Positions 38,748 through 60,779 of a stretch of 64,000 nucleotides of DNA are shown piece after piece. The notes beneath the pieces were generated by a model. That model was not told the DNA's origin. It made no database searches and was given only the letters and a program-made list of their open reading frames with translations. The DNA comes from Podarcis vaucheri (Eukaryota). The stretch lies in assembly GCA_965113315.1 (NCBI GenBank), contig OZ220370.1, one strand, 5' to 3'. The first letter of the stretch is position 1, and the number at the start of each line of letters is the position of its first letter. The position numbers and the translations under genes are program-made.

Positions 38748-41189
38748 ATGGAAATGCCCCTCAAGATCAGGCAGGTTTGGTCTTTCCCCCTGTATCTCTG
38801 TGCATGCATAGCAATGTGTGAGTCCTTCCGCTATTCAGTGGCAGAGGAGGAGAAAAGTGGGTCTCTGGTAGCAAATGTGCTGAAGGATTTGAGAGTGGAT
38901 GCAAAGGAGCTGTCTGCTCGGAGAGCCCGGCTGGTTTCTAAGAGCTCCAAGCAGTATTTCCAGCTGGATCCTCATTCTGGGGATGTGACAGTAAAGGATA
39001 AAATTGATCGGGAGTCCCTGTGTGGTCAGAATGAACCATGTATTCTACTGTCTGAAATTGTGCTGGAAAAGCCATTGCAGCTACACAGAATTGAAGTTGA
39101 AATAGAAGATGTGAATGATAATTCCCCCAAATTCCTTAAAAATCAGTTTATTTATAAAATACCTGAGCAGACTCCTGTGGAAATCAGATTTCCTTTGGAG
39201 AGAGCAGAAGACCCTGACAAAGGAAAAAATACAGTTCAGAACTACACCCTTAGTCCTAATGAGCATTTTAGACTTGATGTGCAAAGTCACAGTGATGGTA
39301 GCAAACAAGCGGAATTGGTATTGGAGAAACAGTTGGACCGTGAGGTGAATTCACAGATTGCCCTGATTCTGTCATCTGTTGATGGAGGAATCCCAAGAAG
39401 AACTGGAACAGCCCAAATAATCATTGATGTTCTGGATAACAATGATAATTTCCCTCAATTTGAACAATCTGTGTACAAAGTAAAACTAATGGAAAACAGC
39501 CCACTGAATACACTGGTTGTAAAAGTTGAAGCAAGTGACAAAGATTTTGGTTCCTATGCAACTATAACTTATTCCTTCAGCCAGGTGGGGCAAACGGTAT
39601 TAAGATCCTTCACTTTAAACACACTTAATGGAGAACTTAGTGTTTCAGGGACAATTGATTATGAAGAAAACACAAATTATGAGATGAAAATCAGAGCTAC
39701 GGATGGAGGGGGACTTTCCTCTTACTGCAAAGTCATTGTGGACATTGAGGATGAGAACGACAATGCTCCAGAGATTACCATCACATCCATCACCAGTCCC
39801 TTACCTGAGGACTCTCCCCCAGACACAGTGGTGGCCCTTTTCAGTGTAACAGACATGGACTCTGGAGACAGTGGCAGAACTGCCTGCACCACTGAAGTCA
39901 ACCTGCCATTTGTGCTCAAACCCACAGAGAACAACTATTACCGGCTGGTGACCCAACAGTCACAGGACAGAGAACAAGCCTCTGAGTATAACATCACCAT
40001 CACAGCCACAGACAGGGGCTCTCCCAGACTCACTTCCACAAGAATACTTCATGTTGAAGTGTCAGATGTCAATGACAACCCTCCAGTGTTTGAAAAGCCA
40101 TTCTATGAAATGCAGTTAAGAGAAAACAATATTCCTGGTCTTCTGATCAATTCGGTCCATGCTGTTGATCTGGACACAGCGCAGAATGCCAAAGTGACCT
40201 ACTCGCTTTTGCCTGGGAAGGTCAATGATGGCCCCACATCCTCTTACATCTCCATCAACTCTGAAACCGGGAACCTGTATGCCATTCGGTCTCTGGATTA
40301 TGAGGAAGTACAAGATTTCCAGGTGACGGTGAGGGCTGTGGATTCAGGTTCCCCTCCACTGAGCTCAGAGGTTCCCATCCGTGTTCAGGTCGTGGATGAA
40401 AATGACAATGCCCCCTTCATCCTCTACCCTCTCCAGAATGGCACTTCCCCCTCGAATGACCTGGTTCCCCGAGGGGCAGAGACTGGCTACCTGGTCACCA
40501 AGGTGGTGGCTGTGGACAGGGATTCTGGCCAGAACTCTTGGCTTTCCTACCAGCTGTTGAAGGCCACAGAACCGGGTCTGTTCACGGTGGGGGCCCAGAA
40601 TGGAGAAGTGACCACCCTGAGGCCGGTCAGCAACCGAGACAGCTTCAAGCAGAATCTGATTGTGGTGGTCCGAGACAACGGCCATCCTCCCCAGTCCACC
40701 TCTGCCACGCTCAGAATCCTTCTAGTGGACGGCTTCTCTGACCCTTATCTGAAAAGTGTGGCTCTCCCAAAGGAGGAAACAGCGGAGGAGGAAGACCCCA
40801 GCCTGACGATGTATTTGATCATCTGCTTGGCTGCCAAGTCAAGCATCTTTCTCATTTCTGTAGTGGCCTTTGTTGTAATCAAGTTGCAGAAACGTGAAAA
40901 GTTCATAGGAACCTACAACTCTGGAGCCAATTTCCCGGTGGGACCTGATTCCCAGGAGATCTCTGCGGATTCTGGTGCTGGATCTCTATCCCAGGCTTAC
41001 AACTATGAGGTGTGCTTAGCTGGTGGGTCTCTGAACAGCGAGTTCAGGTTTCTCAGGTCCCTGTTTCCTGTTTTCTCTGTGGAGCCTCCTAACACTCAGG
41101 TGAATCCAAGGAGTTCCAATGATTCTCAAGAGCTCCCCAGTCAAGTAGAGGAATGTAAAGATAATATCCAGGTAAGAAAAGTATTTTAA
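38748..41189 (+). CDS. PCDHB: Clustered protocadherin beta-like, gene 1 (large exon; probable donor after 41171)
   Basis: Signal peptide, six cadherin repeats (DxNDNxP, LDRE, DGG), [42 protein letters not shown], TM segment and beta-type cytoplasmic [23 protein letters not shown]. Confidence 0.95.
   Translation: [813 protein letters not shown]

Positions 41190-60779: not shown

What the first reader, a model, noticed from the sequence alone, without database searches (positions are those of the whole stretch)
41169..60689. All four beta-type Pcdh ORFs end in an aligned, strong phase-0 splice donor: possible beta-to-constant-exon splicing
Seen: CAG|GTAAGA (41171/2), CAG|GTGAGA (48679/80), GAG|GTGAGA (51800/1) and CAG|GTGAGA (60683/4). 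Each falls exactly on a codon boundary (808, 804, 807, 808 codons), including in the divergent gene 3. The read-through tails are unconstrained in length (5, 5, 35, 31 aa). Established: mammalian Pcdh-beta genes are treated as single-exon with no constant region, although donor-like motifs have been noted at their ends. Pcdh-gamma variable exons splice in phase 0 to constant exons (QAPPNTDW...) lying downstream of the beta cluster. Inference: here beta-type exons are true variable exons that gain a shared intracellular domain, most simply from the gamma constant exons or an unrecognised beta constant region.
Basis: partly seen in the sequence, partly recalled or inferred. Interest (0 to 1): 0.85.

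Follow-up and report, generated by a model that had tools for sequence, protein, structure and literature searches.

The report
Lizard beta-protocadherin exons with working-looking splice donors
Four lizard beta-protocadherin exons each end in a conserved splice donor. Gene models in 19 other squamate species join such exons to one short shared 39-residue end piece, although published work says the beta cluster has no constant exon.

Summary
Four complete clustered-protocadherin exons on the + strand end at 41171, 48679, 51800 and 60683. Each ends in (C/G)AG|GT(A/G)AGA exactly on a codon boundary (808, 804, 807, 808 codons). The read-through tails are 5, 5, 35 and 31 codons.

No fetched model supports the gamma constant exons as partner. 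Among the 229 relatives fetched, 97 RefSeq or Ensembl-derived models from 19 squamate species join exons of both subtypes at exactly this junction to one species-invariant tail of 36-40 residues (P0007 residues 808-846, ARASLSED...GQNDWLTYQ, then stop). This amounts to a short beta-specific constant exon. It is not in this window, and the papers I could read do not describe it: they state that anole beta lacks constant exons.

The tail is more conserved than the adjoining exon end, and the donor is kept across squamates. Gene 2 has no poly(A) hexamer before gene 3 starts.

The tail aligns without gaps to the start of EC6 of the variable exons (hhalign P 1.9e-6). It begins right after a ready-made polypyrimidine-CAG site, so it is probably an exonised relic of a variable exon.

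The parts
38490..38501 (+). Conserved promoter element (CAAGGTGGTGCT, CSE/CTCF-like) 259 nt upstream of the gene 1 ATG
   Evidence: the motif occurs only four times in the window, all on the + strand, each 218-281 nt upstream of one of the four ATGs.
38748..41171 (+). Variable exon 1, coding part, 808 codons (six cadherin repeats, TM, short cytoplasmic part)
   Evidence: It is 94% identical to Podarcis muralis 'protocadherin beta-16-like isoform X7' (P0007), which carries the shared tail.
41169..41177 (+). 5' splice site CAG|GTAAGA, phase 0; read-through gives 5 codons and a stop at 41187-41189
46026..46037 (+). Promoter element of gene 2 (243 nt upstream of the ATG)
46268..48679 (+). Variable exon 2, 804 codons.
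48677..48685 (+). 5' splice site CAG|GTGAGA, phase 0; read-through gives 5 codons
48764..48787 (+). Duplicated copy of an exon end plus donor (ESQHMIQ|GTGAGA), 100 nt after the gene 2 donor
48680..49379 (+). 700-nt spacer between the gene 2 donor and the gene 3 ATG. It holds no AATAAA or ATTAAA, and it holds the gene 3 promoter element.
49163..49174 (+). Promoter element of gene 3 (CATGGTGGCAGT, 218 nt upstream of the ATG)
49380..51800 (+). Variable exon 3 (divergent subtype, '...LIPVFSVGDPN...'), 807 codons
   Evidence: It is 72-74% identical to the published anole beta proteins, and 88-89% identical to Podarcis isoforms that carry the shared tail (P0123, P0124).
51798..51806 (+). 5' splice site GAG|GTGAGA, phase 0; read-through gives 35 codons
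57980..57991 (+). Promoter element of gene 4 (281 nt upstream of the ATG)
58260..60683 (+). Variable exon 4, 808 codons
   Evidence: Its end...GVPSHAGESQHILQ|, is identical to that of P. muralis isoform X1 (P0010), which continues with the shared tail.
60681..60689 (+). 5' splice site CAG|GTGAGA, phase 0; read-through gives 31 codons; AATAAA lies 92 nt downstream
40413..40436 (+). Polypyrimidine tract plus CAG inside EC5/EC6 coding sequence ([10 protein letters not shown]) of gene 1. Equivalent sites are at 47921-47944, 51045-51068 and 59925-59948. This is the site type from which the constant exon's acceptor probably derives.

Best explanation
The four ORFs are variable exons of a squamate protocadherin-beta transcription unit, not free-standing single-exon genes. 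Each has its own promoter element about 220-280 nt upstream of the ATG. Each encodes six cadherin repeats, a transmembrane segment and a short cytoplasmic stretch, and ends in a strong phase-0 5' splice site. By analogy with the alpha and gamma clusters, transcription from the chosen promoter would run through the downstream exons. The first donor would then be joined to a single short beta-specific constant exon that lies beyond the window's end, before the gamma cluster. That exon adds 39 residues (P0007 808-846) and a stop.

Shown here: the donors, their phase and their conservation; the promoter elements; and the existence of the shared tail in annotated relatives, its invariance within a species and its conservation between species.

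Inferred: that these four donors are used in this animal; that the tail is encoded once per genome downstream of the cluster; and the run-through mechanism. The constant exon probably arose from a decayed variable exon, using the polypyrimidine-CAG that every variable exon carries at the start of EC6.
For: (1) Ninety-seven of the 229 related proteins fetched end in the same 36-40 residue tail, joined exactly at the position homologous to the window's donors (88 by the first pattern, 97 by the wider one). They come from 19 species covering geckos, skinks and cordylids, lacertids, an amphisbaenian, a teiid, an anguid, iguanians and a viper. They come from both RefSeq and Ensembl-derived UniProt entries.
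(2) Within a species the tail is identical while the exon ends differ, for example 15 models with 12 different exon ends and 10 models with 10. That is what one shared exon would give.
(3) Both exon subtypes, gene 1/2/4-type and gene 3-type, join the same tail. The nearest Podarcis relatives of genes 1, 3 and 4 do so (P0007, P0124/P0123, P0010).
(4) Between species the tail is 72% identical on average, against 59% for the best-matching last 39 residues of the variable exon. The tail is the higher of the two in 204 of 231 pairs. All 22 tail variants keep the frame and the stop position.
(5) In 117 squamate models without the tail, 84 continue with V, mostly VR or VS. This is what a retained GT-AG(R/Y) donor would translate to. 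Another 31 continue with something else, i.e. they are spliced at the same point to something else.
(6) The donor is an invariant island in the alignment with divergent gene 3.
(7) No AATAAA or ATTAAA lies in the 700 nt between the gene 2 donor and the gene 3 ATG.
(8) Origin: a profile of the tail aligns without gaps to residues 567-602 of gene 1 (hhalign probability 89.7%, P 1.9e-6). Tail residue 1 falls directly after the CAG of a perfect polypyrimidine-CAG site.
Against: Gene models can be propagated between species by protein alignment, so the 19 species are not fully independent. Read-through single-exon models coexist with the spliced ones in the same annotations (e.g. P0011, P0125). Gene 4 has AATAAA 92 nt after its donor, so local polyadenylation of some transcripts is possible. 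The RT-PCR study of the anole cluster reported constant exons only for delta, alpha and gamma (PMC2764143). It searched with mammalian constant exons, and its text does not describe a test of beta splicing. The tail-to-EC6 similarity is marginal at proteome scale (hmmsearch E 0.055 at Z=20000).
Confidence: 0.78

Rival explanations
1. The donors are inherited relics of a gamma-like ancestor. As in mouse, the beta exons are transcribed as unspliced, locally polyadenylated single-exon mRNAs, and the shared tail in databases is an annotation artefact copied between species.
For: Mouse beta genes are unspliced and polyadenylated, with no product joined to alpha or gamma constant exons (PMC3431597). 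Published anole work lists no beta constant exon. Read-through models exist in the same annotations. AATAAA lies 92 nt after the gene 4 donor, and poly(A) hexamers occur within 0.2-0.6 kb after genes 1 and 3. No reads were examined here.
Against: A relic donor should have decayed, yet it is invariant between gene 3 and the other genes and kept in 84 of 84 read-through-type models. A fictitious exon would not stay open, with a fixed stop and 72% identity, across all major squamate lineages while being better conserved than the neighbouring coding sequence. Gene 2 has no poly(A) hexamer before gene 3. Two annotation pipelines agree.
Confidence: 0.12
2. The donors are used, but the partner is gamma constant exon 1, giving beta ectodomains the gamma intracellular domain.
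For: Phase 0 is, from memory, compatible with gamma constant exon 1. The gamma cluster lies downstream on the same strand: an earlier unchecked note of this scan (s1-848962) places gamma promoters about 130 kb beyond the window. The beta cluster is thought to derive from gamma variable exons (PMC7811963).
Against: None of the 229 related models has a gamma-type tail. The models of about 845 aa all end in the short beta tail, and no hit lists the alpha/gamma constant-region Pfam family. A nearer acceptor with a stop codon would normally capture the donor.
Confidence: 0.05
3. The donors are used mainly to reach a shared 3' exon that supplies the 3' UTR and poly(A) site. On this reading the 39 residues are a by-product without a function of their own.
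For: The tail is short and has no recognisable domain. It derives from an extracellular-domain fragment now read in a cytoplasmic context. Gene 2 lacks its own poly(A) hexamer.
Against: The tail peptide is better conserved than the adjacent variable cytoplasmic segment, and it keeps the SED, DWL and YQ-stop positions in every lineage. That points to constraint on the peptide itself.
Confidence: 0.05

Closest known systems
Mammalian Pcdh-beta genes (mouse Pcdhb1-22, human PCDHB)
   Same: The protein architecture is the same (six cadherin repeats, TM, Cadherin_C_2 cytoplasmic stretch). Each exon has its own promoter. RefSeq names the squamate relatives 'protocadherin beta-16-like'.
   Different: Mammalian beta genes are reported as unspliced, polyadenylated one-exon genes with no constant exon (PMC3431597). 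Here every exon keeps a strong phase-0 donor, and relatives are modelled as spliced to a shared tail.
Anole Pcdh-beta subcluster (Jiang et al. 2009, PMC2764143)
   Same: These are the nearest published set. The deposited anole beta proteins (P0143, P0150, P0151, P0162, P0163, P0169, P0199, P0203) are 71-74% identical to gene 3. They end in ...EQ followed by VRN, VRD or VSD, i.e. the same donor read through.
   Different: The paper states that the subcluster lacks constant exons. Current RefSeq and Ensembl-derived anole models (P0144, P0152, P0157, P0166, P0173, P0204, P0222) add the 39-residue tail.
Pcdh-alpha and Pcdh-gamma variable/constant organisation
   Same: Tandem 2.4-kb variable exons, each with a promoter element and a terminal donor, are joined to shared downstream exon(s).
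   Different: [quoted passage not shown] Here the shared part is one 36-40 residue peptide. It aligns to an extracellular EC6 segment rather than to those constant regions (the comparison with the alpha/gamma constant sequences themselves was not run).
Exonisation of decayed gene fragments as terminal exons
   Same: A pre-existing pyrimidine-rich stretch ending in AG inside former coding sequence appears to have become an acceptor, with the old reading frame kept.
   Different: Here the donor material would be a sister variable exon of the same cluster. I have not seen this described for protocadherin clusters.

Membership tests
Clustered protocadherin variable exon | Single ~2.4-kb exon encoding a Cadherin_2 N-terminal repeat, further cadherin repeats (six ectodomains), TM and a short cytoplasmic stretch | tested here: met
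   Cadherin_2, five Cadherin hits and Cadherin_C_2 in all four; uninterrupted ORFs of 809-842 aa.
Clustered protocadherin variable exon | Own promoter with a conserved sequence element upstream of each ATG | tested here: met
   a 12-nt element occurs only at 218-281 nt upstream of the four ATGs (4 + strand, 0 - strand). Its identity with the mammalian CSE/CTCF site is judged from memory, not tested.
Clustered protocadherin variable exon | Terminal 5' splice site at the end of the cytoplasmic stretch | tested here: met
Clustered protocadherin variable exon | Splicing to shared constant exon(s), shown by transcripts | tested here: inconclusive
   Ninety-seven annotated models in 19 squamates show it. 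No reads or cDNA were seen here.
Pcdh-beta subcluster | Variable exons group with mammalian and coelacanth beta in a phylogeny | tested here: inconclusive
   The nearest relatives are the anole genes that a published tree places in beta. No labelled gamma or alpha sequences could be fetched for a tree of my own (one search was useless). Against solved mouse EC1-4 structures, gamma-A9 scores slightly above beta-6 and beta-8, while gamma-A1, gamma-A8 and all gamma-B constructs score below one or both beta constructs; alpha-7 ties beta-8 for gene 3.
Pcdh-beta subcluster | Position between the alpha and gamma clusters | not tested
   There is no protocadherin exon in window 1-38000. Earlier unchecked notes of this scan place an HS5-1-like element at 20530-21350 and gamma promoters about 130 kb past the window. 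This is consistent, but I did not verify it.
Pcdh-beta subcluster | No constant exon; unspliced one-exon mRNAs (the mammalian definition) | tested here: not met
   Conserved donors and a shared tail in relatives' models argue against it. Transcript proof is still lacking.
Pcdh-gamma isoforms | Variable exon joined to the gamma constant region | tested here: not met
   No gamma-type tail occurs in any of the 229 related models. The shared tail is a different sequence.

The most novel reading that the evidence does not exclude
Squamate Pcdh-beta is a genuine variable-plus-constant unit. Its single constant exon was born when a decayed variable exon at the 3' end of the cluster was captured through the polypyrimidine-CAG that all variable exons carry at the EC5/EC6 boundary, so that every beta isoform now shares a conserved 39-residue C-terminal peptide. 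One turtle model also reads through a donor-like GT-AG(Y) (...E|VS) at or within one residue of the homologous position (P0098; the alignment puts the junction one residue earlier). Beta donors may therefore be ancestral to sauropsids or amniotes, with mammals the lineage that lost splicing.
Probability: 0.5. Interest if true: 0.72.

Novelty: new variant of a known kind. Interest (0 to 1): 0.62.

Why it matters
Reviews and the only reptile study define the beta cluster by its lack of constant exons. They leave open whether beta arose from duplicated gamma variable exons that lost the ability to splice, or from a duplicated cluster that lost its constant exons (PMC7811963). A conserved, beta-specific constant exon across squamates would change that picture in three ways:
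- Beta exons did not simply lose splicing.
- A new constant exon can be made from a dead variable exon.
- Beta isoforms in a large vertebrate group share a common cytoplasmic end that could carry a common signal or sorting function.

The question becomes directly testable with existing lizard brain RNA-seq and genomes. The spliced models are already present in public automated annotation, so the new parts are the recognition, the conservation analysis and the proposed origin, not the sequences themselves.

Tried and rejected
- **Reads.** The look-up of sequencing runs listed runs. Gene 2 was left out of later protein, profile and structure-database searches, and only parts of it outside those places were aligned.
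- **Relatives' DNA.** The DNA of the constant exon in relatives could not be read, and no substitution-rate test was possible.
- **Tail in the window.** tblastn found no copy of the tail, only the EC6 look-alikes.
- **Tail outside squamates.** The region search with P0007 806-846 reached only lacertids and a teiid because of the word limit. It says nothing about turtles, birds, crocodilians or tuatara.
- **Beta versus gamma tree.** The search of protein representatives returned mostly giant or fused cadherins, all unnamed and useless for a tree.
- **Classification by solved structures.** This was ambiguous. With whole-exon queries the beta EC1-4 constructs lead their length class. With EC1-4 queries, mouse gamma-A9 scores above beta-6 and beta-8. 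I dropped this as evidence for 'beta'.
- **Overall count of AGGTRAGA.** It is not above chance. Only position and conservation carry weight.
- **First regex for read-through tails.** It was too crude and was replaced by alignment.
- **Literature.** Four searches found no paper describing a beta constant exon in reptiles.
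Full report
**What is in the sequence.**
- The window holds four uninterrupted + strand ORFs: 38748-41189, 46268-48697, 49380-51908 and 58260-60779.
- All four have the clustered-protocadherin make-up: Cadherin_2, five further Cadherin hits and the Cadherin_C_2 cytoplasmic stretch.
- The claimed motifs are there: CAG|GTAAGA at 41171/2, CAG|GTGAGA at 48679/80, GAG|GTGAGA at 51800/1 and CAG|GTGAGA at 60683/4.
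- The ATG-to-donor distances are 2424, 2412, 2421 and 2424 nt, so each donor sits on a codon boundary.
- The motif AGGTRAGA is not more frequent in the window than in shuffles (8 against 5.6). Position is what counts. Four of the six + strand copies are the exon ends, and a fifth (48780) is a duplicated exon end 100 nt after gene 2.
- When the four ends are aligned, the donor is an invariant island, while the flanks between gene 3 and the others have largely diverged.
- Each ATG is preceded at 218-281 nt by a 12-nt element that occurs nowhere else in the window. This fits one promoter per exon.

**What relatives show.**
- Searches with gene 1 and gene 3 returned, apart from a few mammalian, turtle and fish models, only squamate proteins named 'protocadherin beta-16-like'. 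The closest are from Podarcis (94% for gene 1, 92% for gene 3), so the window comes from a lacertid lizard.
- Many hits are 'isoform X1...X17' of about 845 residues. That is the length of a variable exon plus about 39 residues.
- Their C-termini show each variable exon ending in ...Q (sometimes E or K) at exactly the position of the window's donors. They then continue with one common tail (P0007 residues 808-846: ARASLSED...GQNDWLTYQ, then stop).
- By the wider pattern, 97 of the 229 fetched proteins carry it, in 22 sequence variants from 19 species:
  - Podarcis muralis, P. raffonei, Lacerta agilis, Zootoca vivipara;
  - Rhineura floridana, Salvator merianae, Elgaria multicarinata, Hemicordylus capensis, Tiliqua scincoides;
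  - five geckos;
  - Pogona vitticeps, Sceloporus undulatus, Anolis sagrei, A. carolinensis;
  - the viper Protobothrops mucrosquamatus.
- Some models are Ensembl-derived UniProt entries (P0123, P0039, P0157), so two annotation pipelines agree.
- Both exon subtypes in the window join the same tail: genes 1, 2 and 4 ('...LFPVFSVEP...') and gene 3 ('...LIPVFSVGDPN...').
- The end of gene 4 (...GVPSHAGESQHILQ) is identical to that of P0010, which continues with the tail.

**Is the tail a real shared exon?**
- Within a species the tail is identical while the preceding exon ends differ (15 models with 12 different ends; 10 with 10). One genomic copy would give this.
- Between species the tail averages 72% identity. 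The best-matching last 39 residues of the variable exons average 59%, a comparison biased in favour of the variable exon. The tail wins in 204 of 231 pairs.
- All 22 variants keep the frame and the stop position. The only length changes are in-frame.
- In 117 squamate models that lack the tail, the residue after the junction is V in 84, mostly VR or VS, as a retained GT-AG(R/Y) donor would be translated. In another 31 it is something else, which means the model is spliced at the same point to another exon.
- The read-through tails range from 0 to 89 residues, with a median of about 7, and are not conserved.
- In the window, no AATAAA or ATTAAA lies in the 700 nt between the gene 2 donor and the gene 3 ATG. 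That spacer also holds the gene 3 promoter element. Gene 2 therefore lacks an obvious 3' end of its own.
- Gene 4 does have AATAAA 92 nt after its donor.

**What it is not.**
- None of the 229 models ends in a gamma-type constant region, and none lists the alpha/gamma constant-tail Pfam family in its precomputed domains. The identity of that family is from my memory.
- The tail is not in the window.
- An earlier unchecked note of this scan places gamma promoters about 130 kb beyond the window's end. The constant exon should lie in between.

**Probable origin of the tail.**
- tblastn of the tail against the window hit the same place in all four exons, the start of EC6.
- A profile of the 22 tails aligned to a profile of 83 variable exons gives a gapless match of tail positions 4-39 to gene 1 residues 567-602 (...[36 protein letters not shown]). 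Probability is 89.7% and P is 1.9e-6.
- A plain profile search is only marginal at proteome scale (E 0.055 at Z=20000).
- Tail residue 1 falls right after Q563 of [11 protein letters not shown]. In the window that peptide is encoded by gcccccttcatcctctaccctctccag|aat, a long pyrimidine tract ending in CAG, in phase 0. The site is present in all four exons.
- An ab initio model from Crotalus horridus (P0005) splices a beta donor into exactly this site of a downstream exon. A Tiliqua model (P0195) ends in another EC6-like relic.
- I infer that the constant exon is an exonised remnant of a variable exon. This needs the exon's DNA to confirm, which I could not fetch.

**Is it 'beta'?**
- The nearest published proteins are the anole beta set of Jiang et al. 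2009. It is 71-74% identical to gene 3, and their tree groups it with human and coelacanth beta.
- I could not build a tree of my own because no labelled gamma or alpha sequences could be fetched.
- Scores against solved mouse structures are ambiguous. With EC1-4 queries, gamma-A9 scores a little above beta-6 and beta-8, and most other gamma and alpha constructs score below.
- The label therefore rests on the literature and on RefSeq naming.

**Literature.**
- The anole paper states that beta lacks constant exons. It confirmed splicing by RT-PCR only for delta, alpha and gamma.
- A 2020 review repeats this and discusses how beta 'lost' splicing or its constant exons.
- In mouse, beta mRNAs are unspliced and polyadenylated, with no product joined to alpha or gamma constant exons.
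- Four full-text searches found no description of a reptile beta constant exon.
- The feature is thus visible in automated annotation but, as far as I could search, not described.

**Limits.**
- No transcript evidence was obtained. Gene 2 was left out of later searches.
- Gene models can be carried between species by protein alignment, so the species count overstates independence. The conservation of frame, stop and sequence is the stronger argument.

**Verdict.** My confidence in that reading is 0.78. It is a new variant of a known organisation and of moderate to high interest for the protocadherin field.

Noticed in passing
window 126-1403 (-): A 425-aa ORF with a reverse-transcriptase (RVT_1) match, a retroelement fragment at the window's start.
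   Followed up: no
window 41819-41995 (+): A 64-residue stretch 39% identical to the EC4 region of P0007, about 650 nt after gene 1. This is a relic of a decayed variable exon, which shows that such relics lie between live exons.
   Followed up: no
window 48764-48787 (+): A second copy of an exon end plus donor (ESQHMIQ|GTGAGA) 100 nt after the gene 2 donor. A Podarcis muralis model (P0013) uses the equivalent second donor.
   Followed up: partly
window 49214-49357 (+): This stretch is 87.5% identical at protein level to the last exon of the P. muralis model P0013. It lies directly upstream of the gene 3 ATG, so it is more likely gene 3 leader or promoter sequence mis-modelled as coding. In this window the read-through that leads into it has stops.
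   Followed up: partly
window 38490-38501, 46026-46037, 49163-49174, 57980-57991 (+): The promoter elements read GGTGGTGCT or GGTGGCAGT, i.e. without a CpG at the position that, from memory, is the CGCT box of the mammalian element. An earlier unchecked note (s1-848962) says the same of gamma promoters in this genome.
   Followed up: no
P0098 (Chelonoidis abingdonii), C-terminus: A turtle model of the gene 3-like subtype continues with ...ESERE VS at the end of its exon, as a GT-AG(Y) donor would translate. The crude alignment places the junction one residue earlier, and this is one data point only. If real, the donor may predate squamates.
   Followed up: no
P0119 (Hemicordylus capensis): An isoform joins the shared tail from an internal donor after ...SQAYNYE. 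It skips the last ~55 residues of the variable exon, so this may be an alternative 5' splice site.
   Followed up: no
window 32983-33115: A run of N (assembly gap or mask). It was left untouched.
   Followed up: no
window 1-38000: No protocadherin-like coding sequence at all upstream of gene 1, so gene 1 may be the first beta exon of the cluster.
   Followed up: no
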